A stretch of DNA of 64,000 nt, taken from NCBI GenBank assembly GCA_965637545.1, contig OZ281495.1, positions 30,442,001 to 30,506,000 of the forward strand, given 5' to 3'. The notes under the pieces were generated by a model. It saw nothing but the letters and a program-made list of their open reading frames with translations. It ran no database searches and was not told the origin of the DNA. The DNA comes from Phallusia mammillata (lineage: Eukaryota). A program made the position numbers and the translations under genes. Of this stretch, positions 3,624-60,849 are shown piece by piece; the first letter of the stretch is position 1, and each line of letters starts with the position of its first letter.

Positions 3624-4467
3624 TTAATATGGTACAGCTATGTTGAAAAAATAAATGGTTCTGCTTTCTGCAATTGCCCAGTTTTTCAGTTGGTCCATGT
3701 ATTCCGGTTGTAACGGCATCCCGAAGTTGTTCTGATTCGGATTCACGTCGCTGTAGAACAAGCCTGAATAATGTCAAAATAAACAACACAGAGTTAAGGT
3801 CAATGATGGTATTCAGCCGGTTTGCACCGTTTTTTTTAGAACCGTCTCACGAAATTTTATGAGATCAGTGAACCGGTTACCATTACTGGTTACTGTCAAG
3901 GGACTTTTTGCAACAGAACCAGCCAAAAAATATAACTTTTGTGATAAAACCGGCTGACAAAAAACTTGAATCAAGCACGAACCACCCATATTTGCACATT
4001 CTGACATCATTCATACGTGACGTCAAGTGTTTATGACGCCAGGAACGTCTGATTATTAGGTTATAAACCTGTTTATCTATTTTATTTATTACCTTTTTGC
4101 CTTGAACGGTTGCCGAGTTGGGTAATACTTATAAGTGCTTGTGGTATTGGGGATCTGCTGTTACTATTGGGGATATAGGTCTATTACGCTTTTATGAGAA
4201 AAAGGCATATTTTCACTGTCGGTTACCTCCAGGAAAGTTTTCTTTGAGTTGGTTTGTTACAGCTTCTGCAATCATTCCCGCTGCAATGACGTTGCTGTCA
4301 GCATTAAGGTCTGTCTTTAATTCACCGCTTGGTATAAATCCAACGTCAGTGTAACCATCTATATCTAAAAACAAAACAATATCACGACCTGTAATTCCAT
4401 TTCTTGTGGGGAAAACACAGAGGATTGGCCTACCAAATTGCATGACGATTCCATATCCGGAATTCAT
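3624..4467 (-). CDS. G1, uncharacterised 103-aa protein; exons 4467-4434, 4364-4227, 3763-3624
   Basis: GT-AG, phase-1 introns give MNSGYGIVMQFDIDGYTDVGFIPSGELKTDLNADSNVIAAGMIAEAVTNQLKENFPGGLFYSDVNPNQNNFGMPLQPEYMDQLKNWAIAESRTIYFFNIAVPY. Exon sizes and phases match the paralogues. Confidence 0.85.
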
Positions 4468-7349
4468 GATTTACCTCTCGACGATAATGTTTACACTGCT
4501 TAGAAAGAACTTACAAAACTCAAACTGTGTGAAATAAATTGAGTCTTAGTACTTTCTACTATAAGTTATAACTTGTTTAAAACGTTACAGTATTTTTGAC
4601 AGAAGGGTTCAGGAAAATTCGTTACAAATAAATCGCTTCACCTAAAAATGTTAATATTCTCAGCACTCCTAAACCAAGCACAAACATTCCAAATAACAAA
4701 GAAACACCGGATAAAAGTTATTCCCTATAAAACTATCAGTGAAGTTTAACTTGTGTCGCCAACTGACTGATCATGGTTAGGATGTAGAACGACTTTTATA
4801 GACAAAACTGCACAACTAAAAAACTTTTTCTGTATTTTGTGCGGGCGTTGTGTGGGAAAATAACAACACAAATTCATGTCGAAAACGTCAACCAAACCAA
4901 CTGCCAGATAGGAATGTGGTCACAAAAGGCCCTTTGTTTATTATCTCGCGCAGAAATTGTTTAATTTATTTAAAAATACTTTGCAGGTCGAATTTGCTAA
5001 CTAAGCCCAGGAGTTGGAACTGTAATATTCCCCTGTTTGGCAGACGAATTCGAAAAAATATCCCCCGCAAATTAGTCTGTTGTTTTTGAGCTTGCTTTAT
5101 CGCCAAACCTTTACAGGGGTTTTCTATTCCTTTACGTTATTGTGACTGCCCCGTGCAAATGCCGACCGAGTCGCGGTTACTAAATTAGTTTGGAAGGGAC
5201 AATCTGATTCACGCTTGATTTCATACGCATGTTTGTGGCGTTCGTTGACTTCCTATGATACGGTGCTTTGTTTCCAGGTGTGTTTTAAATTTACAAAAAA
5301 CAACATTTTATGTAAAAACGCGCATAACTTGTTGTTATATTTGTAAATAATTTGGCTGATCGCTTTGGTTAAATTTTACAACGTTGATAAGTTAAAATCC
5401 ACTAAAAATAATTTTAACAGCACATTTTTAGTGAATTGTTTTTTTGACAAAAATTTCTTTACAGCCTGCGCTGCGTTATGCATACCCGCGCTACTGATTG
5501 CGTACGGCTTGTTCCCAAAATGCGCCACTAGGGCAGAAAGAACACAAATAAGCAGCTTTACCGCGTCAGCATTTAGATCAGTGGCTCCGAACTTTAATCG
5601 AATACTTTTATTTCTTCAATTATTTCTTTTTCATGCTGAACAAAATTGGGTAATTTATTGTGTTTTTTTTTAAGTGTAGAGTTCATGTTCTCACAGTCTT
5701 AGTGTGTATTAAAATTGAACATAATTAAATTAAGTTTTAAAGTTTGACTTTTGTTTTTTCCCAACATTTACAGATTGCAACATAGCTTCAGCACTTCTTC
5801 ATTTTCCTGATTGCACGCAGGATAGAAAACATTAAGTTATTAAATTCTTCGCAGGTCATAACCAAATACCCACGCTAAAGCACAAGGAAGTAGAAATTTC
5901 AATTTTCATTGTCACGCCAACAAATTTGACTTTGCAAAACTAATTTGTTGTCATTGTGCAGTCAAGCCTCAAATGGAATTTTTGTTTCTTTCTTTTGTTG
6001 TGTCTAAACCACGAAACTATGCACAAATTCCAACCGAGTCGGGGAAACAAATTATAACTATAGTTGGGTGGGGAAGGCCTTCACTTCTGCTGCACACGCT
6101 TTTCGTCATAAGCATGTTTGTGGCGTTTTGCAATGTTTTTTGCATGCCCCCGCTACTAATCGCATACGACTTATTCCCAAAATGCGCCACAAGGACATTA
6201 AAGACACGAAAACGCAGCTTTACTTGTAACAGTACATTCACAGCGCTCCTAAGCCCAATGCAATAAAATCAAAATAGGTTAGGTGATCCCGAATTGGCCG
6301 GGGAATTAGCAATAAGTTGGGTTGGTTGTCATTACTGATTAAAGTGCTCTTTCTTAAACTTATCCACAATAATAGCGGGACCGCCGCCAATAACTTCCTA
6401 AATACCAGGTCGCCCTGCACTGACTGACGATTTAAACGCTAAAACCAAAAGTGAGATGGTCACACCGAACAGGGCCCATTTAAAAAAGCAACTTTAATAA
6501 AATGTAAACAATTTTAAATGTGCAAAACCGACACAATGTAACTGTGTCTCAATCACAACTAGCCCCGCCTCCCGCGTCAACATTTAGATCCCAAACTTTA
6601 TCGAGACACTATTATTTCTTCATAATACCACTGAGTAAATGCTAAATCAAAATTAAATAATTGGCTTTTATATCAACTGCACACTTCATATCCTCAAAGC
6701 CTTAGTGTCTATCAAAATTAAAATTAAACAGAATTAAATTAGATCAATAAATTAAACCCTGTTTAATTTAAACGCGATTTGGCACAGAACAAAAGTAAGC
6801 CATAGTTCCTTTTATTTGCAAACCTACACACCAACCAATCACTTTCATCATGAATGCTCGGACAACCAGCCGAAGTATTTTGTATTTTTTAAGCGATACA
6901 ATGTTAAATTTTAAAAGTTTAGTGCATCGAACTTTTGGATAAGTTGAAAACTTCACTACCTCATTTTTTTGGTTAGCAGTTTCGCTTGGTTTGTTTGATG
7001 GCCGGTTTACTACCATAAAACGGTAAATAATATAACGTTGTCTTTTGTACATCATTACAATTTTTTGAGTTATCTCAAAAATTGACAACTTTCCTTTTTT
7101 ATTGGTCCAAAAAGTATAAAAAACGAAATTTAGTTTTGGAGAAACACATAACAAGATCTTGGGTAATTTTCTTCCTGACTTCGGTTTAATCACGTGACCT
7201 GTTCCAGACTGCTGATTGGTTACCTGTTTTCAACAAGATTTCGACATGTAACGGTGTTAGTTGTTTTATTGTCGGGTTAAAACTTCAGCTTGTTGTGATC
7301 ACACGCAGTAAATATGATTGCGCAATCACAACTGTGACCTGCACGCTGT

Positions 7350-8100
7350 TTATGCAGGTACGTTGAAGAAGTATATGGTTCTTTTATCTGTAATTGCCCA
7401 GTTCTTGAGCTGGCCCATGTTATCTGGTGTGATCTCCAAACCGAAAGTGTTCTGATTCGGATTCACGTCGGTGAAGTACAATTCTGAACGATGTAAAAAC
7501 AAACAACACAGAGTTAAGGTGCAAGCAGTGACCACCCATATTTACACATTCTGACGTCATCCGTGCGTGACGTCACGTCTTTATGACGCCAGTAACGTCT
7601 GATTATTACGTTATAAATCGGTTTATTAAACCTTCATAATGAGGCAATTTATATTGTATTTATCAACTACTTAAGAATGCTTGTGGTCTGTTGCCATTGG
7701 GGACCAGGTCTATCAGGCTTTTATGAGATAAAGGCATATTTCCACTGTTACTTACTTCCAGTATCGTTTTCGTTAAGTACCGTTTTTACTGCGCCTGCAA
7801 CCATTCCCGCTGCTAGGGCGTTGGTTTTAGCATGAACGTCTGCCTTCAATTTACCACTCGGTATAAGTCCAACGTCAGTGTAACCTTCGATATCTAAAAA
7901 CAAAACAGTTTTACAGCGTGTAATTTTCTTTCTTTGTGGGTGAAAACGTTTTAATGGTAGTTTGTGTTATTTAAACCAAAATCCTAATGTACACCTTGCT
8001 GTACCGTTTCTTGCGAAAACAACAAATACCATATATGAAGTAAAAAGACATATAGGATCGGCCTACCATTTCGCATGACGATTCCATATCCATAACTCAT
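7350..8100 (-). CDS. G2, uncharacterised 101-aa protein; exons 8100-8067, 7893-7756, 7483-7350
   Basis: Spliced ORF MSYGYGIVMRNDIEGYTDVGLIPSGKLKADVHAKTNALAAGMVAGAVKTVLNENDTGKLYFTDVNPNQNTFGLEITPDNMGQLKNWAITDKRTIYFFNVPA. Exon 1 is 34 nt and exon 2 is 138 nt, as in G1. Confidence 0.85.
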
Positions 8101-8164
8101 GATTTACTTTTGGACGATAATGTTTTACGGCTCAGAAAGAACTCACAAAACTCTGTAAAAGGCG

Positions 8165-8252
8165 TTAGAGTTGTTTATAAGGTTAGAGTCTTGAATAATT
8201 AGAGTCTTTTACAAGTTTAGAGTTGGAGTCTTTCATAATTAGAGTCTTTGTA
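8165..8252. repeat. Short degenerate tandem repeat of TTAGAGT(C)T upstream of G2
   Basis: About five to six ttagagt(c/t)t motifs at roughly 20-bp spacing. The paralogous G1 upstream region has only one similar motif. Confidence 0.6.
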
Positions 8253-10992
8253 CTTTATACTATAAGATATAACTTGTTTCACACCGTACAATATTTTGAT
8301 ACAATGATTCAGGAAAATTTTTCACGATGGTAGGATGCAAATAAACTGCTTCACTATCAAACCAAACAATTCTCAACTCTCCTAAACGCAACGAAAACAC
8401 TCCAAATAACAAAAAACGTTATCTCTAGATATATAACCATCAGTGAAGTTTGACTTGTGTCGCCAGCTGACTGATTATGGTTAGGATGTAGAACGACCTT
8501 TATAACCCAAGCTGCACCACCAAAAAACTTTTTTCTGTACTTTGTGCGGGCGTTGTGGGGAAAATAACAACACAAATTCATGTCTAAAACGTCATCCAAG
8601 CTAACTGTCAGATAGGAAAGTGGTCACAAAAGACCCTTTGTTAATTATCTCGCGCAGAAATTGTTTAGTTTATTCAAAAATTCTTGTCAGGTCAAAACCG
8701 CTAACCAAGCCCAAGGAGTTGGAACTACAATATTCCCCTGTCAGGCAGACGAATTCGGATAATATCCCCCGCAAATTAGTCTGTTGTTCTTTTCAGCTTG
8801 CTTAATCGCCAAACCAGAGGTTTTTCATTCCATTACGTTGTTGTGACTGAACGACCCTTATCCCAAGCAAATGCCAACCGAGTCGCGGTTACGAAATTGG
8901 TTTGGACGGGAAGGGCGCCTGTCCATGCTTGACCTCATAAGCATGTTCGTGGCGTTTGCAAAGTTTCTGCGTGGCCTCGATAAAAATCGCATACGGCTTG
9001 TTCCCAAAATGCGTCACAAGTGCGGTAAAGGCACGAAAAAGCTTCTTTACTTATCATCAGCCGGTTCGCACCAATTCTATAGAACCGTCTTACGAAATTT
9101 AATGAGATTAGAGAAACGGTACCCGATAGTGGTTACTGTCAATGGACTTTTTATTCCAGAACCGGCTGAAAATATAACTTTTGTGATAGAACCGGCTGAC
9201 AAAAAAATAGAATTACACCACTGCTTGTAAAGGTACATTTTCAGCGCTCCTAAGTCTGAATTAGGCCGGGAATTTGCAAAAAGTTGGGTTGGTTAACTTG
9301 TCCTTACTGATTGAAGTGCTTTTACCCAGCCTTATCCACAATTATAGCGGATCTACCGCCTATTGTATAGCAGGTTGCCCTGCACTGACGGTTTACCGCT
9401 AAAAAACAAAAGTGAGATGGTCACACCAAACAAAGCTTCCACCAAAAATGCAAACACTTTCTAATGTGCCCAAATTGCAACTTGCCCCGACCGCCACGTC
9501 CACATTTAGATTATTGGTTCCCACCTTTTTTAAAACACTTCTATTTCTACATGTTACCACAAAGTAAATGCTACGCATAATAGAAATCTTTACGTCACTA
9601 AAATTCTTCGCAGGTCATAACCAAATAACCATGCAAAAGCCCAAGGAAGTGGAAATTTCAATTTTCCCTGTCATGTCAACGAATTCGACTTGAAGAAAAA
9701 CCAATTCGTTGTTATTGTGCTCCAAATCTCGGAGGGAATTTTTGTTTCCCTTATTTGTTGTTTTTGAACCACGAAACCACGAACAAATTCCAATCGAGTG
9801 AGGGACATCAATTAGTTTGGACGGGAAGGCTTCCTGTTTATGCTTGACTTCATTTATGGTGTTGTTATTGCAATATTTACTTCTGCGCAATTTCATCTTC
9901 CATTGGACGTTATTCAACTTAACAAGGATTTCCTCGCAACATTTTGTGCACAAAATTTCATAAAACGTGTTAATACGTATGTAGAATATTTGTCTTTTAT
10001 TAAATTTAACTAAGTTGTAAAAAAACATAAAATTGATATTAAATCAAGTTGGTCAAAGTTAGTGAATTTAAATACTGTTATCGAAACGTTGGCATATTAA
10101 AATAAAAAACTGCCAGAAGAGCTGAAATTTGTTGATTTATGCCTGGCAGCAACAGTATATTCATTAAATGCCGTTAGTTGAGTATAGTGGGACTCGTTGT
10201 TTAACTAAAAAAATATGTTATGTGAAACAAATGACCTCCTAATTTCGATTTACCTGACGCATAGCTACAAATGCTTGCATGAACGGAAAGTGAAGGTTAC
10301 TAAAACTATATGCATTTTTGCAAAAAAAATCCGCCTCGACTTACAACTCTGATTCAGTGAATGTCTAAACAAGCGTGTTTTGCGAAGTAATTGGTCTTTT
10401 TTTCGCAATCTCTGCTGTTTTAACGTATTTCAAACAGAGAAAAGTTTTTTAAAGGTTTTTTGTTACATCGTGCAGTGATTTAGGCTTTAGGCAACGCAAT
10501 TGTACTGCATATAATTTACCTTTAAAATGCATAACGACTTGAAATCGAAACCCTTCCGTGTAAAATGTATAAAAACTTGGCCCTTTGCAAAAATTTTCAG
10601 ACGCCCAAGTGCACATCACGCATATTTTGGTACAGGTCTGTCTTCCAAATTGATTAATTCCGTAAAACAAACTATTCCGCTTGATTTGGATTTAAAACAT
10701 TATTGTTTACCCAAACATTATAATGCGTTGTTTGTATTTATATGACACTCAAGGTAAAATCCTACACCAACAATCATTTGTTAATCCACTTTCTTTATAG
10801 TATTTTGTTCTTTCTTTTTTTCACAAGGTTCGAACCAGGGATGCTCCCGGGGACGAATCCCGATCAGAGGTTTTTCATGTATGGGTTTTTTTTCAAGTTC
10901 CTGCCCTATTTTGTTCTTTCAAAGCAATAGACTGACGCAGTCGACGCACTGGCGTCACCTAACGGATACGCTAATTAAAGTGAATAAAGTCT

Positions 10993-11729: not shown

Positions 11730-11885
11730 CCACTGAACCTGTGAGCTCAGTTGGGAAAGCGCTCTGTCGTTAGGTTGAATCTCACCGCAGGCCATTTTTT
11801 CTAGCCTACGCCTTGCCATCTGGTTATGCTAAGGAAACTGGCTTGATTCGGTGTAACGCCTTCAATGGGCTGGTGTAGTATGATT
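11730..11885 (+). mobile_element. tRNA-derived SINE-like element, family A (other copies/fragments ~19290-19510 -, ~21795-22045 -, ~23575-23875 +, ~26460-26590 -, ~34690-34995 -, ~36520-36770 +, ~39055-39263 +, ~45235-45455 -, ~47463-47510 -, ~49040-49262 +, ~58735-58915 +)
   Basis: A-box TAGCTCAGTTGGTAGAG (clearest at 39122-39138) and B-box GGTTCGAATCC (36557-36567), followed by a shared body ctagcctacgccttgccat...cgccttcaatggg. Some copies also carry the tail ...cagggctgatcccagt...ttcatctta. Confidence 0.7.
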
Positions 11886-12939: not shown

Positions 12940-13817
12940 CTATGTTTTGTTGAAAAAGTAAACGTCGGTTTTGCCTCCTTTTACCCAATCCTTTAGCTGA
13001 TACATGTTGTCGGCCACGATTTCTTGCCCATAATCATTAGCCGATGGATCCTCATTGCTATAGTAAAGAGCTGAAAAAAGTGAAAGCACTTTAGAAGCTA
13101 TTTTGCCTATATTGTTTTTAAAGTAATTTTAAGATTTCTATTGAAATAAAATGTTTCCTAATTATTTTCTTCGCTTTTCTCGTGACATTTTTTTAAATTT
13201 CATATCTAGGTGTTTGGTCCGACTTAAAAAGTCAAATTTACCAATACGAATGAGTCATTGCTGCCAGCATAATGTATAAACGAGCATTGCTCTTCCAGCA
13301 GTTGAATAATTAATCGACGTTTCGACGTCCCATACAAGATTCCTTCATCAGGATATAGGCATATCTCGCAAGAATATTTACGCTGCTGAAAGGGCAATAC
13401 TTGTTTACCAATGGGAAGTTAGAACACAATTTTTTCCCGAGTGCAAAGACAAGCCCTTAAAAATTTAAGGAAAATGCTCACGAAGCTTTCCGTCTGTCTT
13501 CAATTTTGTGTTCACAGCAGCATAAAGTTTCTCGGCCACTATTTTGGGGTCTGAAGGTTCAATATCCTTCTTTATATCGGAGGCCGAAATCTCGCCAACT
13601 TTTTCGAAACTCCCATTTTCAACTAAGACAGAAACTTTTTTAGGAAAGAATTCAATCAAAATTATATAATAGTCATAAATAATTTCCCGTTTATGAAACA
13701 TTACCTTTTTATTTTTGTTATTACATGTACATTTCAGACTAAGAAGAACTTACATAAACAAAGCAATTACTTAACTGTTCTATACTTACATTGTTGTTTG
13801 ACAATGTAGCTAGACAT
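12940..13817 (-). CDS. G3, uncharacterised 99-aa protein (divergent subfamily); exons 13817-13790, 13622-13482, 13070-12940
   Basis: Spliced ORF MSSYIVKQQFENGSFEKVGEISASDIKKDIEPSDPKIVAEKLYAAVNTKLKTDGKLPLYYSNEDPSANDYGQEIVADNMYQLKDWVKGGKTDVYFFNKT. Phase-1 introns; the LY(Y/F)S..P..N.(Y/F)G and YFFN motifs are conserved. Confidence 0.8.
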
Positions 13818-15870: not shown

Positions 15871-16319
15871 GGCCGCTACTTGTAAAAAATCGAATTCATT
15901 TTATCTCACCCCTGGAGGGTTTTTTCTGGGGTTAAGTTCTGCATCACTGTAGTTTAAAGTTTAAAGCGTAGTTTGTATTTTGTCGGATAAATTTGTAGTC
16001 TATTGTTACATGTTGTTACACGGAAACATTTAAGTCTAGCGACAAAGTTAACAAGTCACTCTCCAAGCTCATTTCGAACATCAATTGCCTCCTATATTTG
16101 CCCTATTTAGCCACGCCTCATCAGTAACGACAGCGACTAAACATATAATAAATCTTGTAACATAATGCGCTCAGGTCATAAGTTCATGTAATACGTTTTT
16201 CCACAATACAATTTGACACCATCATAGGTTTAATTCGTTTTGTGAATGGAAAAAAACATTAAATTACACGTGGTTCATTCTGCAGCTACCTTCTGATATA
16301 ATAATAGGTTGGGTTAAGA

Positions 16320-17145: not shown

Positions 17146-17897
17146 ATGGGGAATTATTATGGAATCGTTATGCGACTTGGTAAGTTGACCTCCATTGCAA
17201 ATCAGCGCACCGTATAACATAGTACTTGAAATTCAATGGACAAGAAACTTCGGCGAAACAAACACACCGCTTTGGACAATTAAACTCCATACCATGTGGA
17301 TTATGAAACGATAATTTTGTTTATACGTCATGAATGATATTTTTCAGATGGTAACGGTTATTCTGATGTGGGAAGTATTAACCACAGCAATGAATGGGAG
17401 GACATTAACGCACGGTCTGCGGAAGTTTCAACGGAGAAAATTATTTCTGCAGTAAAAACCCAAATGCGGCATGTATACAATGGCGGTAAGCAAGACTTGT
17501 ACACTCCTTGTATTATCTCATCACACATAGTTTATGCGGAGCGTAAAAGAACCTATACCTGGACCAACAGCATTTCCTTCTGTGCATCTACGTTTGGTGG
17601 CATCGTCCACCTGATCTGGTTTGTGACTACAGCGTGCAATGTTGAGAACTGATAGACATTCAGTCGCACGATTGTTACGTCATACATAAGTGACGTCACA
17701 AAGTGCATGGTCGCCACTCGTCAAGGGTCGTAAAACAATTAAGTTTTAATTTTTATTTTTTATTTTCAGAATTGTACTTCAGTGATCAGAATCCTCAAGA
17801 TAATGACTTTGGATATAAGATCGAAGCAAAGAACATAGGCACGCTCGTAGATATGGTTCAGGCTAATGACAGATACATTTATTTCTTCAACAAATAA
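17146..17897 (+). CDS. G4, uncharacterised 99-aa protein; exons 17146-17179, 17348-17485, 17770-17897
   Basis: Spliced ORF MGNYYGIVMRLDGNGYSDVGSINHSNEWEDINARSAEVSTEKIISAVKTQMRHVYNGELYFSDQNPQDNDFGYKIEAKNIGTLVDMVQANDRYIYFFNK. Canonical gtaag donors and tttcag acceptors. Confidence 0.85.
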
Positions 17898-20294: not shown

Positions 20295-21562
20295 TTATTT
20301 GTTGAAGAAATAAATGTATTTCTCTTTAGCGAGTGCCCAATTCTTGAGCTTGCCCATGTGCTGTGGCTCGATCGTATATCCAAAGTCATTTTGATTCGGA
20401 TCCTGATCACTGAAGTACAACTCTGAAAATAAAAAGAAATTAAAAGCTTGACCAGTGGCGACCATGCACTTTGTGACATCACTCATGTATTACGTCACGA
20501 GACCCCTCCCCCCAAAAAAATATTCTGATGGGATTTTTTTACATATAGATTGCTAATTTAAGTTGCATTTATAGCTCAATTAAACGCTAACACAACAATG
20601 CAAAAATAACAAAAAGAAATTATATGTCAGTAATGTTGTTTGTCACTTCTCAGTGAGCAAGACGACATTGAATGCCTCTATTATCTGTGCATTTTCTTCC
20701 TAACTTTGTGCTTTGTTTTTTATTGCTGACAGCAAGTAAAAAAACATTGCTATGATACAATTAGGCTTCTTACTAAATAACAACAATTATTTCTGGATAA
20801 TTGTAATGGCATGATATCATTTACAATTCCAAAATAAAACTGTAAAGTGAAATCTGGTTGAAAAGCTGCTCCGTGGCACAAGGATCTTCGTACCCCTTGA
20901 TGTTCGATCTCGTACCCCCAAGGGGTACGAGTACCCCCAGTTGGGAACCCCTGCTTTTGATTATGGCCTGTGTTGTACAGACAACAATTGTGCGAACAAA
21001 TGTCTATCAGTTCTGTCGGGAACATTGCCTCTTTATCGTGTCTGCACAAATACACCAGCTAATGATGAGTGCATTAAAGACCATCATGAGCAAAATTGCA
21101 CGCTGTAGTCACATGCTAGATCAGCTGGACGATGCTACCAAACGCAGATGCACAGAATAAAAGGTCATTGGTCCAATTAATTTCTAGTATAAGTTAGATC
21201 GCATTTATGCTTAGCATGAACTATATGTGATGAGATAATGCAGGCAGTGTACAAGTTGTGCTTACCGCCATTGTAAACATGCTGCATTTGTGTTTTTACA
21301 GCAGAACTAACTTTCTGCGCCATAACTTCCGCAGACCATGAGTTGATGTCTTCCCATTCGTCGCTGTGTTTAATTCGTCCGACTTCAACATAACCATCAT
21401 CATCTAAACAAAATTATCATTTCATAACCCGCATTGTATGGAGTTTAATCGTCCAATAACTGTTTTATCGAAATAACTATAAGTCCGTTGTTGTATGGTG
21501 CCCTGATTTACAAAGGAGGTCAACTTACCAAGTCGCAAAACAATTCCATAAACACTCCCCAT
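20295..21562 (-). CDS. G5, uncharacterised 99-aa protein; exons 21562-21529, 21403-21266, 20422-20295
   Basis: Spliced ORF MGSVYGIVLRLDDDGYVEVGRIKHSDEWEDINSWSAEVMAQKVSSAVKTQMQHVYNGELYFSDQDPNQNDFGYTIEPQHMGKLKNWALAKEKYIYFFNK. Exon sizes 34/138/128 are identical to G4. Confidence 0.85.
20860..20953 (-). mobile_element. One-ended hAT-like fragment in G5 intron 2 (copies at ~37613-37706 and ~46800-46895)
   Basis: Terminus CAGGGGTTCCCAA followed by repeated GGGGTAC subterminal motifs. I could not find the other end. Confidence 0.55.
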
Positions 21563-25986: not shown

Positions 25987-26186
25987 NNNNNNNNNNNNNN
26001 NNNNNNNNNNNNNNNNNNNNNNNNNNNNNNNNNNNNNNNNNNNNNNNNNNNNNNNNNNNNNNNNNNNNNNNNNNNNNNNNNNNNNNNNNNNNNNNNNNNN
26101 NNNNNNNNNNNNNNNNNNNNNNNNNNNNNNNNNNNNNNNNNNNNNNNNNNNNNNNNNNNNNNNNNNNNNNNNNNNNNNNNNNNNNN
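25987..26186. other. Assembly gap, 200 N
   Basis: Exactly 200 Ns. The round size suggests a scaffolding join of unknown true length. Confidence 0.98.
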
Positions 26187-36200: not shown

Positions 36201-39200
36201 ATCAAGCAAGCAGTTTTTGCTATATGATTTTTCCATTTTAGTCCACAAGAAGGACTAAAATTGTTTCATCTGTTTTGTCTGTATCTAGTCTCTGTTTTCT
36301 GTAAAGAGGGTGAAGGAATTGTTTTCAACATTTTCCAAAATTTCTATTGAAAGTGTCAGAGATGCAGAAATATGTGATTTTATACTTCAAGTGTAAAGTT
36401 ATGTTTTCCCCTAAAACATGTTTCTTACATCTTTTTTTAAAGATAAAACCAAGCCATACATTCATAAAATTTTCGTTCTTATGTACTGTTACGTCATCAT
36501 CTTCTGGAAGCCTATTCCCCGAAAGAGCGGGGGTCCCGGAAAGACTCCTGTCGTGGGTTCGAATCCCACCGCAGGCTAGATTTTTCTAGCCCGTGCCTTG
36601 CCATATGTATATGCTTGGGAGACGAGCTCATTCGGTTTAATGCCTTTAATAGGCTTGGTGTACTGTGAATTATCGATAAGTATGCCGTGATCGCTGGTCT
36701 GCATCGACGCTTCAGGGCTGATCCCAGTATGCATATATTCATCTTAGCTATCAAGCTCTACAGTCATAAAAATTTCGTTCTTGTGTACTCTTACGTCATC
36801 AGGTTTAGGTAGTTCGCTTCTAAATAGAAATCATATACAACACGCTTTCTTTAAAGCCCAATAACATCAAACTGCCCAGACAATTTTTTAAACATATTTT
36901 TACAAGAAATTAAGTTATGTTTTTTCTGGTACGTTGAAGTTTTTATAATTGTCATTTTTAGAAAACAACTTTGTTATCTAAAAAGCTTGATCTGAATTCA
37001 AACAAGGGGAGTGTTTATGGAATTGTTTTGCGACTTGGTAAGTTGACCTCCTTTGTAAATCAGGGCACCATACAACAACGGACTTATAGTTATTTCGATA
37101 AAACAGTTATTGGACGATTAAACTCCATACAATGCGGGTTATGAAATGATAATTTTGTTTAGATGATGATGGTTATGTTGAAGTCGGACGAATTAAACAC
37201 AGCGACGAATGGGAAGACATCAACTCATGGTCTGCGGAAGTTATGGCGCAGAAAGTTAGTTCTGCTGTAAAAACACAAATGCAGCATGTTTACAATGGCG
37301 GTAAGCACGACTTGTACACTGCCTGCATTATCTCATCACATATAGTTCATGCTAAGCATAAATGCGATCTAACTTATACTAGAAATTAATTGGACCAATG
37401 ACCTTTTATTCTGTGCATCTGCGTTTGGTAGCATCGTCCAGCTGATCTAGCATGTGACTACAGCGTGCAATTTTGCTCATGATGGTCTTTAATGCACTCA
37501 TCATTAGCTGGTGTATTTGTGCAGACACGATAAAGAGGCAATGTTCCCGACAGAACTGATAGACATTTGTTCGCACAATTGTTGTCTGTACAACACAGGC
37601 CATAATCTAAAGCAGGGGTTCCCAACTGGGGGTACTCGTACCCCTTGGGGGTACGAGATCGAACATCAAGGGGTACGAAGATCCTTGTGCCACGGAGCAG
37701 CTTTTCAACCAGATTTCACTTTACAGTTTTATTTTGGAATTGTAAATGATATCATGCCATTACAATTATCCAGAAATAATTGTTGTTATTTAGTAAGAAG
37801 CCTAATTGTATCATAGCAATGTTTTTTTACTTGCTGTCAGCAATAAAAAACAAAGCACAAAGTTAGGAAGAAAATGCACAGATAATAGAGGCATTCAATG
37901 TCGTCTTGCTCACTGAGAAGTGACAAACAACATTACTGACATATAATTTCTTTTTGTTATTTTTGCATTGTTGTGTTAGCGTTTAATTGAGCTATAAATG
38001 CAACTTAAATTAGCAATATATATATAAAAAATCCCATCAGAATATTTTTTTGGGGGGAGGGGTCTCGTGACGTAATACATGAGTGATGTCACAAAGTGCA
38101 TGGTCGCCACTGGTCAAGCTTTTAATTTCTTTTTATTTTCAGAGTTGTACTTCAGTGATCAGGATCCGAATCAAAATGACTTTGGATATACGATCGAGCC
38201 ACAGCACATGGGCAAGCTCAAGAATTGGGCACTCGCTAAAGAGAAATACATTTATTTCTTCAACAAATAACGAGCACCAACAGTTGCACAGAAATATTTT
38301 GTACATTCCAATAGTTAACGTGTGATCAAATATATTTTCGTATTAACCTGGAAAATAAAACTGTCTTGCCTTAAAATGTATTCAAAAGCAGGGAGCCTAT
38401 GAGCAGCCTCGGACAGGTCATGTGACATAAACATGAATAAACGGACTCCGGTTTATACAAGCTATTGCTGCCAGGCATAATACCAAGTATTCAAGTTTGT
38501 AGAGCTCTTCTGGCAAATGCATTTTATTTCGGCGTTTCGACGTCCTATACAGGTCACCTTCACCAAATACCACTGGCAAAGTTTTTGTCACAATAAACTC
38601 TTTACAAAAGGTCACTTGTCGGCTTTGGAGCGGAGTATGAACTCGACGAGAATTGTGTTCGTGACGCCGCTTTGCTTTAAACACTGGCTCGCTTACCCGC
38701 GTCTAATGAACCAAATTTCACACAGTTCAATTACACCACAACCGAAGCAGAGGTTTTAACATATGATGGGGTAATAAGTGGAATATCGTTTCTTGGTGGT
38801 CGGGTTTGGGAAGCATCCTTTTTTGTAGACACCTGACCTGCAAATAGTTTACCTTCACATAGTTTGACACAACCTGGTTCCAAAATCAAATCATCAGGTC
38901 AGACAAAAAAATGAAAAATACCGATAGGTGGAGTAAAGAGCAGCGGCTAGAGTAAAAAGGCAGCCCGGTTAAGAACTAAGTTTTATTTTATTTTTAAGCT
39001 GAGATGAATACATCTTAGCTTATCAATGGCCAATTTGGCGATTCCCTGCTACAAAGCTGACATGCGCAGCATACGAGGCAGGCAACGGCTCGACTTTTAG
39101 CGGGATCTCCACTGAACCCTTGTAGCTCAGTTGGTAGAGTCCGAATCCCGGAAAGACTCCTGTCGTGGATTCTAATTTCACCGCGGTATGTTTTTCTAGC

Positions 39201-43088: not shown

Positions 43089-43840
43089 ATGGGGAATTAT
43101 TATGGAATCGTTATGCGACTTGGTAAGTTGACCTCCATTGCAAATCAGCGCACCGTATAACATAGTACTTGAAATTCAATGGACAAGAAACTTCGGCGAA
43201 ACAAACACACCGCTTTGGACAATTAAACTCCATACCATGTGGATTATGAAACGATAATTTTGTTTATACGTCATGAATGATATTTTTCAGATGGTAACGG
43301 TTATTCTGATGTGGGAAGTATTAACCACAGCAATGAATGGGAGGACATTAACGCACGGTCTGCGGAAGTTTCAACGGAGAAAATTATTTCTGCAGTAAAA
43401 ACCCAAATGCGGCATGTATACAATGGCGGTAAGCAAGACTTGTACACTCCTTGTATTATCTCATCACACATAGTTTATGCGGAGCGTAAAAGAACCTATA
43501 CCTGGACCAACAGCATTTCCTTCTGTGCATCTACGTTTGGCGGCATCGTCCACCTGATCTGGTTTGTGACTACAGCGTGCAATGTTGAGAACTGATAGAC
43601 ATTCAGTCGCACGATTGTTACGTCATACATAAGTGACGTCACAAAGTGCATGGTCGCCACTCGTCAAGGGTCGTAAAACAATTAAGTTTTAATTTTTCTT
43701 TTTTATTTTCAGAATTGTACTTCAGTGATCAGAATCCTCAAGATAATGACTTTGGATATAAGATCGAAGCAAAGAACATAGGCACGCTCGTAGATATGGT
43801 TCAGGCTAATGACAGATACATTTATTTCTTCAACAAATAA
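43089..43840 (+). CDS. G7, duplicate of G4 (99 aa); exons 43089-43122, 43291-43428, 43713-43840
   Basis: G4 coordinates + 25943; exon sequences appear identical. Confidence 0.85.
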
Positions 43841-46237: not shown

Positions 46238-47345
46238 TTATTTGTTGAAGAAATAAATGTATTTCTCTTTAGCGAGTGCCCAATTCTTGAGCTTGCCCAT
46301 GTGCTGTGGCTCGATCGTATATCCAAAGTCATTTTGATTCGGATCCTGATCACTGAAGTACAACTCTGAAAATAAAAAGAAATTAAAAGCTTGACCAGTG
46401 GCGACCATGCACTTTGTGACATCACTCATGTATTACGTCACGAGACCCCTCCCCCCAAAAAAATATTCTGATGGGATTTTTTATATATATATTGCTAATT
46501 TAAGTTGCATTTATAGCTCAATTAAACGCTAACACAACAATGCAAAAATAACAAAAAGAAATTATATGTCAGTAATGTTGTTTGTCACTTCTCAGTGAGC
46601 AAGACGACATTGAATGCCTCTATTATCTGTGCATTTTCTTCCTAACTTTGTGCTTTGTTTTTTATTGCTGACAGCAAGTAAAAAAACATTGCTATGATAC
46701 AATTAGGCTTCTTACTAAATAACAACAATTATTTCTGGATAATTGTAATGGCATGATATCATTTACAATTCCAAAATAAAACTGTAAAGTGAAATCTGGT
46801 TGAAAAGCTGCTCCGTGGCACAAGGATCTTCGTACCCCTTGATGTTCGATCTCGTACCCCCAAGGGGTACGAGTACCCCCAGTTGGGAACCCCTGCTTTA
46901 GATTATGGCCTGTGTTGTACAGACAACAATTGTGCGAACAAATGTCTATCAGTTCTGTCGGGAACATTGCCTCTTTATCGTGTCTGCACAAATACACCAG
47001 CTAATGATGAGTGCATTAAAGACCATCATGAGCAAAATTGCACGCTGTAGTCACATGCTAGATCAGCTGGACGATGCTACCAAACGCAGATGCACAGAAT
47101 AAAAGGTCATTGGTCCAATTAATTTCTAGTATAAGTTAGATCGCATTTATGCTTAGCATGAACTATATGTGATGAGATAATGCAGGCAGTGTACAAGTCG
47201 TGCTTACCGCCATTGTAAACATGCTGCATTTGTGTTTTTACAGCAGAACTAACTTTCTGCGCCATAACTTCCGCAGACCATGAGTTGATGTCTTCCCATT
47301 CGTCGCTGTGTTTAATTCGTCCGACTTCAACATAACCATCATCAT
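46238..47345 (-). pseudogene. G8, G5 copy lacking exon 1; exons 47345-47208 and 46365-46238 remain
   Basis: At 47460-47463 the sequence jumps from the equivalent of 21520 to that of ~21999. This deletes ~478 bp including exon 1 and the proximal upstream region. Confidence 0.85.
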
Positions 47346-50561: not shown

Positions 50562-50653
50562 TACCCCCACCTAAATGTATGACCCGGGTAAATACATTTC
50601 ACACACAAACAAACATCGAACGTTCAACGAAATTCAATAAACAAAACAGCACA

Positions 50654-56344: not shown

Positions 56345-56410
56345 TTTCCTTCACCGAGCGACAGCTTCTTTCCGACCAGCAAAGTAGAAAGCTTCTCTCG
56401 ATCAGCGACA

Positions 56411-56512
56411 GTTGAAACTTCCTTTTCAACGAGCAGCAATTGAAAACTTCTTTTTCAACGAGCAGTAGTTGAAAACTTCTTTTTCAACGAGCAAAAGTTG
56501 AAAACTTCTTTA
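56411..56512 (-). repeat. Tandem ~29-bp hairpin repeats at the primer-binding-site position
   Basis: Units start at 56411, 56439, 56468 and 56497; consensus GTTGAAAA-CTTCT-TTTTCAAC-GAGCAGYA. Confidence 0.9.
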
Positions 56513-57234
56513 TGTAGACTCTGAACGGCCGACCTGCAAGGCTGAGCCTCACAAAGGGGTTTGTCACGTTGAAACACGCCCCGCCCTTTCCCACACAAAT
56601 CACACTTCCCGAATCACGTGTAATAATCCACAGCGACAACAGCGGCAACAACCACAACGTCGTACACAATCAGGAACGGACAGAAACAGGGTTGAGAACG
56701 AAACGGGAACGTAGACGGGAACGGTTTTCTAAACAAGAAAACGAAACACATTGACATATGCCAACGCACAAAAATGCCAATGACTAACTTACCAACTATT
56801 TTGCGACACAGGTCAACAGGTACAGTACACGTATCAACAGTTGCAAGACGATGAAACAATCGCTGTAATCCCTATAGGAAAATACAGCATGCCATAAGTC
56901 ACACATAAAGCCATGAATTAATTTAGGTCACAAATCGAATTAAACACTCACCGACAATCACGGTAAACAGCCTTCACTTGAAGATTAATTAGTCAGTCGT
57001 CACAATATTTAATTTAGCCTTATTCGTCTCTAAAAATGCAACACAAACGAATTTACTTAATGCAGTAATAAATCACCTTACTCGACCACGTTGTACAGTA
57101 AAATGAACTAATCATTGCAACATACAGACAAAGGCCTTCTAATTTTACTGTTACGCACTTGGCGATTGTAACGTCATAGCAGGGGAAATAATGGGACAAA
57201 TTAATCATGCGTAACTGAACGTGGAGATGTAACA
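56513..57234 (-). repeat. 5' LTR
   Basis: 722 bp, same termini as the 3' LTR. Confidence 0.95.
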
Positions 57235-59971
57235 AGTCCCTTTTCGCACTTTTCTATTTTGATTAAAAGGGGCGTATTTCCCGGTTGTAAAGGTTTATAC
57301 TCTTACGTTATCAAGTCTTAATGGTTCGTTTTACATAACATCAGGGTTATTTTGCATCTTCCTCAAGTCAACACACTTCAAACTTAGTGGTATATATTTG
57401 TTACTTCTCATTAATATAATTAAACCGATACATCACAATACAAGAATTAATATAATTAATATGTAAAAAATTCGAAGAGGTTAGCTTTAAGAATACATAT
57501 CATTTAGATTTTTTACAAGGAGGTCAAACCAGGACCCTCCCATGCAGGTACAAATTCTAGTCAGGATTTTTTTCTATTTCTATGTAAAAATCAAGCGCTA
57601 CGGACCATTAGGCATGTTAGCTCTGCAGCATAACCTAGTGGTTATGTTACAAAAAAATAACTTTGTCGCTATCGGCGCCAATCACAACTCGAAGAAGTCT
57701 TGGCCGAATGGTCACGTCTAGCGCGCCTGAATTCGTCCCATGGGATGTCCTGCATGGGTTCGAACCCCATAAAACAAAGAAAGTCGAGTTGGAAAAACCG
57801 AGGCGGCTATTTTTGGTCGGGTTCGAGTATTAGCACCAGTTTCGATAAAATGGGCTTAAATTCAGTTCTTCAACTTGGTTTGTATTAGAAATGGTCGAAG
57901 GTTCACACCCGTAAAAATCCGAAAAAAAAACATAGAACATAAAATGGATAATGGGCACAAACTCTCGATTGGCCTAAAACGAGCCATCAAGCTTTAAAGC
58001 TAGAAGATTTGTTCATAATATTAAAAACAGATTTTCAAATTGCCCCTCCAAAATATAAAATTAAATTCTGCAGCATTGGGTATTTGCTGGCTAAAGTGCA
58101 ATGTTTGTTTTGTTTTAATTTGGTAATTTTTTTTCACCGAGACAAATTTGTGTTAGGAACGAGTACAACTCTGAACAGGATAGTAACAGTTTTTTAAACA
58201 AACAAACTCATATTAGAAGGGGTAGATACTAAAGATTTAGAATATAATTCAAAAGAAATAGAATCATTTCTTTTTTTCTTTCGCTTCACTTTGTTTCATT
58301 TCAAACGATACATTGCTAGTTTTCTTCAGGTTCTCGAAGAAATGTGCTTTGTACAGATTTCTGCTGCTGCGAACGTCACACAACTTGTATAGTGACATCA
58401 CAAACACCACCATTGTGACTGAAAACACTGAAAAAGCATCAATGCAATTCCCCTATACATGTGTAGAGCTGTCACTCATGTATCGGCGGTTTATGCAATC
58501 AGAAAAATCCGCTAAAATTCCGCTTCTCTTGGCCACAGAGTTTATTTCGTTTCGGACATGTCAGGGAATTTCGAAACGCCGGGTAACCCTAAACTCCATG
58601 CATAATTTATTTGACTCCTGACTTACAACATTTTTACCTTTACATAGTTTGATACAAGCTTGTTTATCTAAAATCAAATCAACAGACCAAAAATGACAAA
58701 TACCGATAGGTGGCGTAAAGAGCAGAGTTTCAGCAGATTCTCCACCGAGCATGCGCAGATCATGATAAAGTGCGATTCCCTAAAAGACTCCCGTTATGTG
58801 TTTTGAATCACACCGCAGGCCATTTTTTCTATTCTACGCCTTGCCATCTGGTTATGCTAAGGAGACTGGCTTGATTCGGTAAAACGCCTCCAATGGGCTT
58901 GGTGTAGTATGATTTATTTTTTTAGGTTACATTTTTAATGCAACTCAAACAGCTTTAACCGCCATCATGTTTACTTTTTTTCTTAAATATAGATTTCATT
59001 GCTTTTTGCACCACATATTGGTATTTACAAAACTATGTCAGATATGAGTGCTGATCCTACTTCGTTAACCGTTGCTACAAGACCGTTTACCATGCGATTT
59101 AAAACAGCCTTGTTGTTTCACGTCTTTGCATGCTCCGGACCTAATCACTTAATTAAAGTGCTCCATTTACTTATTCTGCTTCCCCGTTTTACACTTGTAA
59201 GTTTGTAAAGCGCAGGTGTTCTGTTTAAATGCTACAAATTAGTTAGTAGTCTTTGCTTGTAGTAGGATTAACTTTTGTCTGTTTCACTGCAGAAAGGCTA
59301 GTCCAAATTATTTGTCATGCTCTGCAACTGTGTGATAGTCGAGCGTTGGTGTGTTTGTTTTGTTTAGCACAGTCATTCAAAAAGTAGGGTGTGTCTGTAT
59401 GTGATTCTGTTTCCGAATAGTAAGTACATGTTTCTTCTACCAAACCTTTTACTTTCTAGGTAATGAAGGTTGCTTTACAGATTGCCCCATACAAGTTCTG
59501 ATTGTGGGATTGTTTTACATGGCATGTACTGCGTTCCACATGGTCGCATTATTGGTCACGTGATAGTAGCGTTGCTGTGTTGAAAATTGTATGTTTCAAA
59601 AACTTGATGTGGGTAACAAATCTTTACTGGTTTTGCTTCAACGAAATGTCGGTAAAATTACATTTTCCCAACAGTGAATATGTGAATTGTATCATACCTG
59701 AAGAGAAACGCCACGAGTCTTAGGTTTCGATTTAATAAGTGGACGGACGTGAATTTGTATTTATTTGTCTCCTGAGCAACCCATCATTTCTAACACAGAT
59801 TATGTGTTATTACGTTATCACTGCTTAGCGACGGTATTGACCGGAGTTCTCCGACAAAGCAAAATAAAATAAAACAGAAAAAAATGAGACCGTATTTTAT
59901 TATTGCGAAACTGCAGATCGGGTATTTACAGTGTTGGACAAATGCAGACACAAAAAGATTCAGTTCAAATT

Positions 59972-60849
59972 CTATATTTTGTTGAAAAAGTAAACGTCGG
60001 TTTTGCCTCCTTTTACCCAATCCTTTAGCTGATACATGTTGTCGGCCACGATTTCTTGCCCATAACCATTAGCCGATGGATCCTCATTGCTATAGTAAAG
60101 AGCTGAAAAAAGTGAAAGCACTTTAGAAGCTATTTTGCCTATATTGTTTTTAAAGTAATTTTAAGATTTTTATTGAAGTAAAATGTTTCCTAATTATTTT
60201 CTTCGCTTTTCTCGTGACATTTTTTTAAATTTCATATCTAGGAGTTTGGTCCGACTTAAAAAGTCAAATTTACCAATACGAATGAGCCATTGCTGCCAGC
60301 ATAATGTATAAACGAGCATTGCCCTTCCAGCAGTTGAATAATTAATCGACGTTTCGACGTCCCATACAAGATTCCTTCATCAGGATATAGGCATATCTCG
60401 CAAGAATATTTACGCTGCTGAAAGGGCAATACTTGTTTACCAATGGGAAGTTAGAACACAAATTTTTCCCGAGTGCAAAGACAAGCCCTTAAAAATTTAA
60501 GGAAAATGCTCACGAAGCTTTCCGTCTGTCTTCAATTTTGTGTTCACAGCAGCATAAAGTTTCTCGGCCACCACTTTGGGGTCTGAGGGTTCAATATCCT
60601 TCTTTATATCGGAAGGAGAAATCTCGCCAACTTTTTCGAAACTCCCATTTTCAACTAAGACAGAAACTTTTTTAGGAAAGAATTCAATCAAAATTATATA
60701 ATAGTCATAAGTAACTTCCCGTTTATGAAACATTACCTTTTTATTTTTGTTATTACATGTACATTTCAGACTAAGAAGAACTTACATAAACAAAGCAATT
60801 ACTTAACTATTTTATACTTACATTGTTGTTTGACAATGTAGCTAGACAT
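59972..60849 (-). CDS. G9, duplicate of G3 (99 aa); exons 60849-60822, 60654-60514, 60102-59972
   Basis: G3 coordinates + 47032; frame and splice sites intact; four amino-acid differences from G3. Confidence 0.8.

What the first reader, a model, noticed from the sequence alone, without database searches (positions are those of the whole stretch)
3624..60849. Hidden, locally expanded family of three-exon genes encoding Cys-free ~100-aa proteins I do not recognise
Seen in the sequence: nine loci plus a relic share the same architecture (28-34 nt exon 1, 138-141 nt exon 2, 128-140 nt exon 3, both introns phase 1, GT-AG). The five distinct types (G1, G2, G3/G9, G4/G7, G5/G6/G8) are highly diverged. 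They still keep an N-terminal Y (YGIV in all but G3/G9), VG, D, AV, L(Y/F)(Y/F)(S/T), P..N.(F/Y)G and a terminal (I/V)YFFN. Open frames, splice phases and motifs kept across such divergence indicate real, selected genes. None has Cys, a signal peptide or a TM segment, and the ORF track misses them because of splicing. A further copy probably starts just past the window end, since 63961-64000 matches the G4 upstream region. Inference: an old, lineage-specific family turning over rapidly, as stress or defence effector families do.
Basis: partly seen in the sequence, partly recalled or inferred. Interest (0 to 1): 0.85.

Follow-up and report, generated by a model that had tools for sequence, protein, structure and literature searches.

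The report
Orphan three-exon small-protein gene family
A cluster of small three-exon genes in a sea-squirt-like genome encodes about 100-residue, cysteine-free, soluble proteins that look like real, selected genes but match nothing in the databases I could search; their function is unknown.

Summary
Nine loci share one architecture: exon 1 of 28-34 nt, exon 2 of 138-141 nt, exon 3 of 128-140 nt, GT-AG introns, both phase 1. They fall into five diverged types (30-65% protein identity). Seven copies have intact ORFs of 99-103 aa. G6 has no start codon and G8 lacks exon 1. No significant "relic" was found.

Evidence that they code:
- Codon-model omega is 0.43, against omega = 1 at p about 8e-7.
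- Divergence by codon position runs 2 < 1 < 3.
- Exons are free of indels while introns and flanks are full of them.
- All ATGs have A at -3. Three types have an in-frame stop just upstream.
- AATAAA lies 54-84 nt after every stop codon.

No relatives turned up in Pfam, PDB sequences, 1.84 billion protein representatives, the ESM Atlas or three contig collections. The queries were single exons, so distant kin could be missed.

AlphaFold folds the exon-3 piece confidently (pLDDT 92.5) as strand-loop-helix-strand. The full spliced protein was not folded, so the fold is unknown.

The copies at 96-100% identity sit in large segmental and inverted duplications beside an assembly gap. The gap touches no gene, but copy number is uncertain.

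The stress or defence role is untested.

The parts
3624..4467 (-). G1, intact three-exon gene, 103 aa (exons 4467-4434, 4364-4227, 3763-3624)
   Evidence: Donors GTAGGC and GTAACC, acceptors ending in AG, phase 1/1. In-frame TAA two codons before the ATG. Intron 1 (69 nt) happens to be in frame without a stop.
7350..8100 (-). G2, intact gene, 101 aa (exons 8100-8067, 7893-7756, 7483-7350); tandem partner of G1
   Evidence: 61% protein identity to G1, NG86 omega 0.57. The duplicated unit runs about 3277-5242 against 6972-8956.
12940..13817 (-). G3, intact gene, 99 aa (exons 13817-13790, 13622-13482, 13070-12940); most divergent type, 28-nt exon 1
   Evidence: 30-34% identity to the other types. 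In-frame TGA two codons before the ATG.
17146..17897 (+). G4, intact gene, 99 aa (exons 17146-17179, 17348-17485, 17770-17897)
   Evidence: 65% identity to G5, omega 0.57.
20295..21562 (-). G5, intact gene, 99 aa (exons 21562-21529, 21403-21266, 20422-20295); intron 2 enlarged to 843 nt
37004..38270 (+). G6, inverted near-identical copy of G5; the start-codon position reads AAG, so there is no start
   Evidence: It lies in the 99.7%-identity inverted duplication 19302-25626 against 39263-32940. It is either a pseudogene or a sequencing or assembly error.
43089..43840 (+). G7, copy of G4 with identical coding sequence
   Evidence: It lies in the 98.1%-identity duplication 14739-21520 against 40710-47462.
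46238..47345 (-). G8, copy of G5/G6 with exons 2 and 3 only; exon 1 and the proximal upstream region are absent
   Evidence: It is 100% identical to G6 over 2218 bp. Homology breaks at 47462, next to a tRNA-like repeat.
59972..60849 (-). G9, intact copy of G3 (96% protein identity)
   Evidence: It lies in the 96.1%-identity duplication 11775-16992 against 58803-64000.
4002..4025 (-). Pair of CRE-like octamers (TGACGTCA-type), 16 nt start to start, in intron 2 of G1. Equivalent pairs lie at 7552-7575 (G2), 17675-17698 (G4) and 20474-20497 (G5), and in the recent copies at 38068-38091, 43618-43641 and 46417-46440.
   Evidence: Five of the seven exact TGACGTCA sites in the window lie in intron 2 of family genes, against 0.89 expected by chance. 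Absent from G3/G9.
3492..3521 (-). Conserved CCAAT-box plus CACGTG-like block about 100-160 nt after the stop codon of G1. Equivalents lie at 7190-7219 (G2), 18024-18053 (G4), 20140-20169 (G5), 38396-38425, 43967-43996 and 46083-46112.
   Evidence: Found only at family loci. Absent from G3/G9.
3565..3570 (-). AATAAA polyadenylation signal of G1. The others lie at 7265-7270, 12864-12869, 17981-17986, 20206-20211, 38354-38359, 43924-43929, 46149-46154 and 59896-59901.
   Evidence: One lies 54-84 nt after every stop codon.
63961..64000 (+). Window end, homologous to sequence 154 nt upstream of the G4/G7 ATG; a further G4-type copy is expected beyond the window
   Evidence: The alignments 11775-16992 against 58803-64000 and 40710-42935 against 61768-64000 both run to the window edge.
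25987..26186 (.). Assembly gap; not part of any gene model
   Evidence: It truncates the left copy of a repeated palindromic element at the inner end of the inverted duplication. It was left unfilled.

Best explanation
This is a real, taxonomically restricted family of protein-coding genes.

Shown here: at least five anciently diverged paralogues (G1-G5) lie within 18 kb. Each has three exons and encodes a 99-103-aa acidic, Cys-free protein with no signal peptide and no membrane segment. Recent segmental and inverted duplications add four near-identical copies, two of them defective. The coding sequence is under purifying selection that is real but weak.

Inferred: each protein is a single compact alpha+beta domain. 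The likely order of elements is strand (YGIV), strand (GY.DVG.I), long helix (exon 2), strand (LYFSD), short strand, helix (..M..LK.W) and a terminal strand ((I/V)YFFN).

The invariant residues are aromatic or aliphatic core positions and loop Gly, Pro and Asn. No acidic, basic, His, Ser or Cys residue is invariant except one Asp. My best guess is therefore a non-enzymatic intracellular binding or adaptor module. Its conserved core would hold the fold while its helix surfaces diversify between paralogues.

Transcription may be driven or modulated by bZIP (CREB/ATF-type) factors through a conserved, fixed-spacing pair of TGACGTCA-like sites in intron 2. That would suit an inducible gene. The function and the regulation are inference only.
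For: - Architecture, phases and splice sites are shared by all loci.
- Five types have 30-65% identity, with 17 invariant columns.
- ML codon model: omega 0.43, against omega = 1 with 2dlnL = 24.4, p = 8e-7.
- NG86 omega is 0.57 for G1-G2 and G4-G5. Deeper pairs give 0.16-0.39 with saturated dS.
- Differences by codon position are 0.43, 0.34 and 0.51.
- The chance of an open 100-codon frame is about 5e-4 per type by shuffling. The other two frames carry 1-12 stops.
- Exons have no indels apart from one in-frame 6-nt difference. Introns and flanks of the same pairs carry 505-652 gap columns.
- A at -3 of every ATG. In-frame stops two codons upstream in G1, G2 and G3. AATAAA 54-84 nt after each stop.
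- Protein properties.
- AlphaFold2 on the exon-3 alignment gives mean pLDDT 92.5, with strand 2-4, bridge 15-16, helix 19-30 and strand 37-39. The exon-2 fragment gives a helix at pLDDT 65-80.
- CRE-like pairs and the CCAAT/E-box block are conserved between clades whose synonymous sites are saturated, and occur only at family loci.
Against: - There is no expression evidence. No spliced product of these genes is present in the protein collection of 15 billion sequences. That collection is said to include assemblies of public sequencing runs.
- Selection is weak for a structural domain.
- At nucleotide level the exons are not better conserved than the alignable non-coding DNA around them: 78-80% against 84% identity.
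- The full-length protein was never folded. The domain topology is pieced together from two fragment models and from the sequence pattern.
- The binding-module role rests only on the lack of catalytic-looking invariant residues.
- The CRE-like sites are consensus matches, not shown to be bound.
Confidence: 0.72

Rival explanations
1. The proteins are very divergent members of a known fold class. The first reader's companion note (s1-375570) suggests a stand-alone beta-grasp (ubiquitin/PB1/DCX-like) domain. They would then act as such modules do, in protein-protein docking. This overlaps with the best explanation rather than excluding it.
For: - The inferred order of elements, strand-strand-helix-strand-strand-helix-strand in about 100 aa, is what a beta-grasp with a second helix would give.
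- The stretch LYFSD.DP..N.FG..I....M..LK loosely recalls the acidic OPCA region of PB1 domains. That resemblance is from my own knowledge and was not tested.
Against: - No Pfam match to any ubiquitin-like, PB1, DCX or other family for any exon at E up to 10.
- No PDB sequence match.
- No C-terminal Gly-Gly.
- The same order of elements fits several other small alpha+beta folds.
Confidence: 0.3
2. Only the five diverged types are real single-copy genes. G6, G7, G8 and G9 would be assembly artefacts: uncollapsed haplotypes or mis-joined repeats around the gap.
For: - The extra copies sit in blocks of 2-7 kb at 96-100% identity.
- One inverted pair abuts the assembly gap at 25987-26186.
- G6 and G8 are 100% identical over 2218 bp.
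- Earlier notes of the scan call the genome an ascidian, a group known for high heterozygosity (for the organism; the heterozygosity point is my own knowledge).
Against: - The blocks have different partners and orientations: direct, inverted and nested.
- G8 carries a distinct 475-bp deletion relative to G5.
- A BEL/Pao element is inserted between blocks. This looks more like real nested duplication than simple haplotype duplication.
- The question cannot be settled without reads.
Confidence: 0.3
3. The loci are dead or never-expressed relics, and the apparent constraint is a leftover of a formerly functional family.
For: - No product in the protein collections.
- Two copies are visibly defective.
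- Omega is fairly high, and exons are no better conserved than neighbouring non-coding DNA.
Against: - Five lineages separated by saturated dS all keep open frames, splice sites, phases, start context and polyA signals.
- Omega is below 1 at p = 8e-7.
- The young pair G3/G9 also has omega 0.31.
- Exons are indel-free while introns are not.
Confidence: 0.07
4. The unit is cargo of a mobile element, and its spread reflects transposition rather than host gene duplication.
For: - Copies lie on both strands.
- Family-specific conserved non-coding blocks flank the coding parts.
- tRNA-like repeats sit at some block ends.
Against: - All copies lie in one cluster.
- The recent copies are embedded in multi-kb segmental duplications that carry unrelated flanking DNA.
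- No transposase, terminal repeats or target-site duplications were seen around single units.
- The old paralogues share only short blocks outside the exons.
Confidence: 0.04

Closest known systems
Stand-alone beta-grasp / ubiquitin-like docking domains (PB1, PF00564; doublecortin, PF03607)
   Same: About 80-100 aa, soluble, no disulfides. The inferred order strand-strand-helix-strand-strand-(helix)-strand is the same. An acidic loop follows the third strand.
   Different: No profile or structure match was obtained. There is no conserved PB1 lysine or full OPCA motif and no C-terminal Gly-Gly. These proteins are free-standing, whereas PB1 and DCX are domains of larger proteins. The topology itself is not established.
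Type-1 cystatins (stefins)
   Same: About 100 aa, Cys-free, no signal peptide, and three-exon genes (own knowledge).
   Different: The defining QxVxG loop and the N-terminal Gly are absent from the alignment. There is no Pfam or PDB match.
GIY-YIG nuclease domain (PF01541)
   Same: About 100 aa. An N-terminal hairpin has a Tyr-containing strand (YGIV) followed about 11 residues later by Y..VG, which recalls GIY...YIG (own knowledge).
   Different: The catalytic Arg, Glu and Asn are not conserved: the alignment has no invariant Arg or Glu. The second motif is not Y-[IV]-G. There is no Pfam match.
Taxonomically restricted, tandemly amplified small-protein families with fast-evolving exons. Examples are the orphan families common in fast-evolving tunicate genomes, and venom phospholipase A2 genes whose exons diverge faster than their introns (own knowledge).
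   Same: Local tandem and segmental amplification, birth and death of copies, raised omega, and exons diverging at least as fast as the alignable introns.
   Different: Here the products have no signal peptide and no cysteines, so they are not secreted disulfide-rich effectors. Overall omega is below 1, and no site-level positive selection could be tested with five sequences.

Membership tests
Beta-grasp / ubiquitin-like (PB1, DCX, ubiquitin) | Five-stranded mixed sheet (order 2-1-5-3-4) grasping one helix | tested here: inconclusive
   Only fragments were folded. Exon 3 gave strand, bridge, helix, strand at pLDDT 92.5. Exon 2 gave a helix at pLDDT 65. Sheet order is unknown because the full spliced protein has no reference and was not folded.
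Beta-grasp / ubiquitin-like (PB1, DCX, ubiquitin) | Match to a family profile or to a solved structure | tested here: not met
Ubiquitin-like modifiers | C-terminal Gly-Gly for conjugation | tested here: not met
   All types end in YFFN followed by 1-5 residues, none of them Gly-Gly.
GIY-YIG nucleases | GIY and YIG motifs plus conserved catalytic Arg, Glu and Asn | tested here: not met
   The alignment of the five types has no invariant Arg or Glu, and the second motif is Y/F-x-x-V-G. No Pfam hit.
Type-1 cystatins (stefins) | QxVxG hairpin loop | tested here: not met
   Absent from all five types.
Bona fide protein-coding gene | Purifying selection on the reading frame | tested here: met
   Omega 0.43 against 1, p = 8e-7. 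Codon-position pattern 2 < 1 < 3. Indel-free exons.
Bona fide protein-coding gene | Spliced, polyadenylated transcript | not testable with these tools
   No RNA-seq was available. The signals are present: GT-AG, a polypyrimidine tract and AATAAA. A search for the exon 2-exon 3 junction in metagenome contigs found nothing, as expected.

The most novel reading that the evidence does not exclude
The family founds a protein fold or family with no described relatives. It would be a tunicate-restricted set of small intracellular proteins whose surfaces diversify between paralogues, with exons evolving faster than introns, and whose genes are switched on through a conserved intronic pair of CREB/ATF sites. 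That would amount to a new inducible intracellular stress or innate-immunity module sitting beside a C-type lectin receptor gene.
Probability: 0.15. Interest if true: 0.7.

Novelty: new variant of a known kind. Interest (0 to 1): 0.45.

Why it matters
If expressed, these genes are absent from the protein collections I searched, and gene predictors that skip 28-34-nt first exons may miss them. They would add a new sequence family to the tunicate-specific gene set.

The cluster shows several stages of gene birth and death in one 64-kb stretch: old tandem paralogues, young segmental copies, one copy without a start codon and one 5'-truncated copy. Coding exons diverge at least as fast as their introns while staying in frame. 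This pattern is usually linked to recognition or defence proteins, but here it occurs in a Cys-free, non-secreted protein.

The fixed-spacing CRE-like pair conserved in an intron gives a direct, testable handle on regulation. If the genes prove silent or the fold ordinary, this is one more lineage-specific family of unknown function.

Tried and rejected
Searches that found nothing:
- Pfam on every exon peptide and on the 84-aa in-frame read-through of G1. Only two sub-threshold hits (DUF5772, E 0.088; PepSY_like, E 0.038), taken as chance.
- Word-indexed search of 5.8 billion protein clusters with exon 2 (G1) and exon 3 (G5). In-frame intron extensions were used so that 100-aa relatives would pass the length filter. 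There were no candidates.
- Exhaustive hmmsearch of an exon-3 profile against 1.84 billion representatives. The only two hits were driven by internal repeats in unrelated proteins.
- PDB sequence profiles for exons 2 and 3.
- ESM Atlas feature search. Best scores were 0.66-0.67, below any useful level.
- Related loci in metagenome, prokaryote-genome and viral contigs.
- A spliced-junction pattern in metagenome contigs.
- Fold searches with the exon-3 model in PDB, AlphaFold DB clusters, VIA-align wide and the atlas. None was specific.
- Literature searches for a described Phallusia family or for assembly notes.
- Earlier scan notes by words and by sequence.

Ideas tested and rejected:
- Exon 2 and exon 3 as an internal duplication: hhalign probability 0.2%.
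- tRNA or Rfam elements in the window: none.
- A tenth "relic" copy: not significant.

Left out on purpose: the full-length spliced proteins have no reference and would have had to be typed as letters. They were therefore not sent to Pfam, PDB, structure prediction or exact look-up tools.

Not available: any collection of eukaryotic genomes or transcriptomes to search at DNA level.
Full report
**What is in the window**

The window is 36-40% G+C, apart from 50-56 kb. It has one N run, at 25987-26186. A six-frame scan for the terminal motif (I/V)YFFN found nine places, all followed within 1-5 codons by a stop.

Reading upstream of each place gave the same three-exon layout. Exact models were built. 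Exon 1 is 34 nt (28 nt in G3/G9). Exon 2 is 138 nt (141 in G3/G9). Exon 3 is 128-140 nt. Every intron starts with GT, ends with AG after a pyrimidine-rich tract, and is phase 1. The spliced frames are 300-312 nt and encode 99-103 aa.

**The gap**

The N run lies more than 4.4 kb from the nearest family exon, and no model crosses it. A self-comparison of the window shows that it truncates the inner end of the left arm of an inverted duplication. The arms are 19302-25986 and 39263-32374 at 99.6-99.7% identity. They enclose a unique spacer that contains a C-type lectin gene (Lectin_C, E 4e-8, at 29478-29753) with a hydrophobic segment downstream. One ORF listed across it (25762-26319) is an artefact of the unread letters.

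**Copy structure**

The nine loci form five types: G1, G2, G3/G9, G4/G7 and G5/G6/G8. All five types lie within 3.6-21.6 kb. The rest of the window repeats parts of that stretch:
- 11775-16992 against 58803-64000, 96.1% identity
- 14739-21520 against 40710-47462, 98.1%
- 19302-25626 against 39263-32940, inverted, 99.7%
- 37046-39263 against 47462-45245, inverted, 100%

G4 and G7 have identical coding sequences. G3 and G9 differ at 8 of 300 coding positions.

G6 differs from G5 in the exons at one position only. That position turns the start codon into AAG, and no other in-frame start exists.

G8 has exons 2 and 3 only. Relative to G5 it lacks 21521-21995, which holds exon 1 and about 430 bp upstream. 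The break lies next to a tRNA-like repeat.

The result is seven intact frames, five distinct proteins and two defective copies.

The window ends 154 nt before the point where a G4-type ATG would fall.

Copies at 96-100% identity beside a gap may be real recent duplications or assembly artefacts. That cannot be decided here.

**Are they genes?**

Several independent signals say yes.
- *Open frames.* Each of the five types keeps an open 100-codon frame, while the two other frames carry 1-12 stops. Shuffled versions stay open about 5 times in 10,000.
- *Selection.* A codon model on the six distinct sequences gives omega 0.43. Fixing omega at 1 costs 2dlnL = 24.4, p about 8e-7. Nei-Gojobori omega is 0.57 for G1-G2 and for G4-G5, and 0.31 for G3-G9. 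It is 0.16-0.39 between clades, where dS is saturated.
- *Codon positions.* Differences fall at positions 1, 2 and 3 at rates of 0.43, 0.34 and 0.51.
- *Indels.* In the two young pairs the exons have no indels except one in-frame 6-nt difference. Their introns and flanks carry 505 and 652 gap columns.
- *Start context.* All ATGs have A at -3. G1, G2 and G3 have an in-frame stop two codons upstream, which fixes the start.
- *Polyadenylation.* AATAAA lies 54-84 nt after every stop codon.
- *Possible leader acceptor.* A pyrimidine tract plus AG lies 25-50 nt before each ATG. In an ascidian this could be a spliced-leader acceptor. That is inference.

Against this, the exons are not better conserved at nucleotide level than the alignable non-coding DNA. 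Exon mismatch is 22% against 16.5% for G1-G2 (p = 0.03) and 20% against 15.5% for G4-G5 (p = 0.11). Part of this is alignment bias, because unalignable intron DNA is hidden in gaps. Even so, the coding sequence is evolving fast.

No expression data could be consulted.

**The proteins**

They are 11.0-11.5 kDa with pI 4.0-5.6. They have no Cys, 10-14 aromatic residues, no hydrophobic segment and no N-terminal signal-like stretch.

Seventeen columns are invariant across the five types: M1, Y5, V-G, I, D, A-V, L, P, N, G, L and Y-F-F-N. Fourteen more are conservative. Apart from one Asp, the invariant residues are core aromatic or aliphatic residues or loop Gly, Pro and Asn. Nothing looks like a catalytic set.

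AlphaFold2 on the exon-3 alignment gave an unexpectedly confident model: mean pLDDT 92.5, with strand 2-4, bridge 15-16, helix 19-30 and strand 37-39. The exon-2 fragment gave a helix at pLDDT 65-80.

Together with the strand-like patterns YGIV and GY.DVG.I, I infer a single alpha+beta domain with the order strand, strand, helix, strand, strand, helix, strand. It is also compatible with other small folds.

The full spliced protein has no reference and was not folded, so the fold is open.

**Relatives**

None were found. The searches were:
- Pfam on all exon peptides
- PDB sequence profiles
- word-indexed searches with exon 2 and exon 3
- an exhaustive profile search of 1.84 billion representatives, where the only two hits were repeat artefacts
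- ESM Atlas features
- back-translated pattern scans of metagenome, prokaryote and viral contigs
- fold searches with the exon-3 model

There are two limits. A 42-position profile needs about 41 bits to be reported against so large a library, so paralogue-level relatives at about 30% identity in other tunicates could be missed. No eukaryotic genome collection could be searched at DNA level.

Even the window's own products are absent from the protein collection. Either the genes are not annotated and were not assembled from public RNA data, or such data are not covered.

**Context**

Earlier follow-up notes of this scan name the genome as the ascidian Phallusia mammillata. I did not verify this. 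A BEL/Pao LTR retrotransposon in the window fits a metazoan.

**Regulatory blocks**

Between the G1/G2 and G4/G5 clades, whose synonymous sites are saturated, two short non-coding blocks survive.

One is a pair of CRE-like octamers in intron 2 (TGACGTCA, TGATGTCA, TTACGTCA or TGACGTAA). The pair is always 16 nt start to start. Five of the seven exact TGACGTCA sites in the window lie in these introns, against 0.89 expected.

The other is a CCAAT-box plus CACGTG-like block about 100-160 nt after the stop codon.

Both occur only at family loci and are missing from G3/G9. They suggest bZIP (CREB/ATF-type), NF-Y and bHLH input. This is inference from consensus matches.

**Verdict**

The reading as real, old, lineage-restricted, fast-turning-over genes is supported. 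The stress or defence role is not tested.

As a sequence family it is new to every resource I could query. As a phenomenon, a lineage-specific tandem family of small proteins, it is a familiar kind.

My best mechanistic guess is a non-enzymatic intracellular binding module under inducible control, at about 20-25% confidence for that part. That the genes are real I hold at about 85%.

Noticed in passing
49840-57234: Complete BEL/Pao LTR retrotransposon with two 722-bp LTRs that are 100% identical (49840-50561 and 56513-57234). It has one uninterrupted 1896-aa ORF (50654-56344, minus strand) with DUF1759, aspartyl protease, RT, Peptidase_A17, integrase zinc-binding and DUF5641 domains. It looks like a very recent insertion and may still be active. 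It accounts for the G+C rise at 50-56 kb.
   Followed up: partly
28921-30905 (+): C-type lectin gene in the unique spacer of the inverted duplication. Lectin_C domain at 29478-29753 (E 4e-8) with an EPN motif. A hydrophobic, membrane-like segment lies in the piece 30555-30905.
   Followed up: partly
4002-4025, 7552-7575, 17675-17698, 20474-20497 and copies: A pair of CRE-like octamers with fixed 16-nt spacing in intron 2 of four of the five gene types. It is conserved although synonymous sites between these clades are saturated. It is absent from G3/G9.
   Followed up: partly
3492-3521, 7190-7219, 18024-18053, 20140-20169 and copies: Conserved CCAAT-box plus CACGTG-like block about 100-160 nt downstream of the stop codons of G1, G2, G4 and G5. 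It could be a downstream enhancer or a promoter for something on either strand.
   Followed up: partly
22000-22013, 36553-36566, 47465-47478: A tRNA-like repeat (T-arm GTGGGTTCGAATCC; ARAGORN calls no tRNA) sits about 440 nt upstream of G5 and G6. In G8 it lies directly at the break that removed exon 1. It is possibly a SINE that marks a deletion or duplication breakpoint.
   Followed up: no
4365-4433 (-): Intron 1 of G1 is 69 nt, in frame and without a stop. Intron retention would give a 126-aa product with a 23-residue insert between the first two strands.
   Followed up: no
17146-17163 (+), 21545-21562 (-): G4/G7 and G5 start with MG(N/S)..G(I), which fits the simple N-myristoylation consensus (own knowledge of the PROSITE pattern). 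G1, G2 and G3 do not have Gly at position 2.
   Followed up: no
17769-18338 (-), 43712-44281 (-): A 184-190-aa open frame runs antisense across exon 3 and the 3' flank of G4/G7. It has no Pfam match and is not kept at G5, so it is probably chance.
   Followed up: partly
25276-25986, 32374-33291, 57960-58418: A roughly 0.9-kb element that is itself palindromic (32374-32722 against 33291-32940, 98.9% identity). It lies at the inner ends of the inverted duplication and again near 58 kb. The assembly gap cuts one copy.
   Followed up: no
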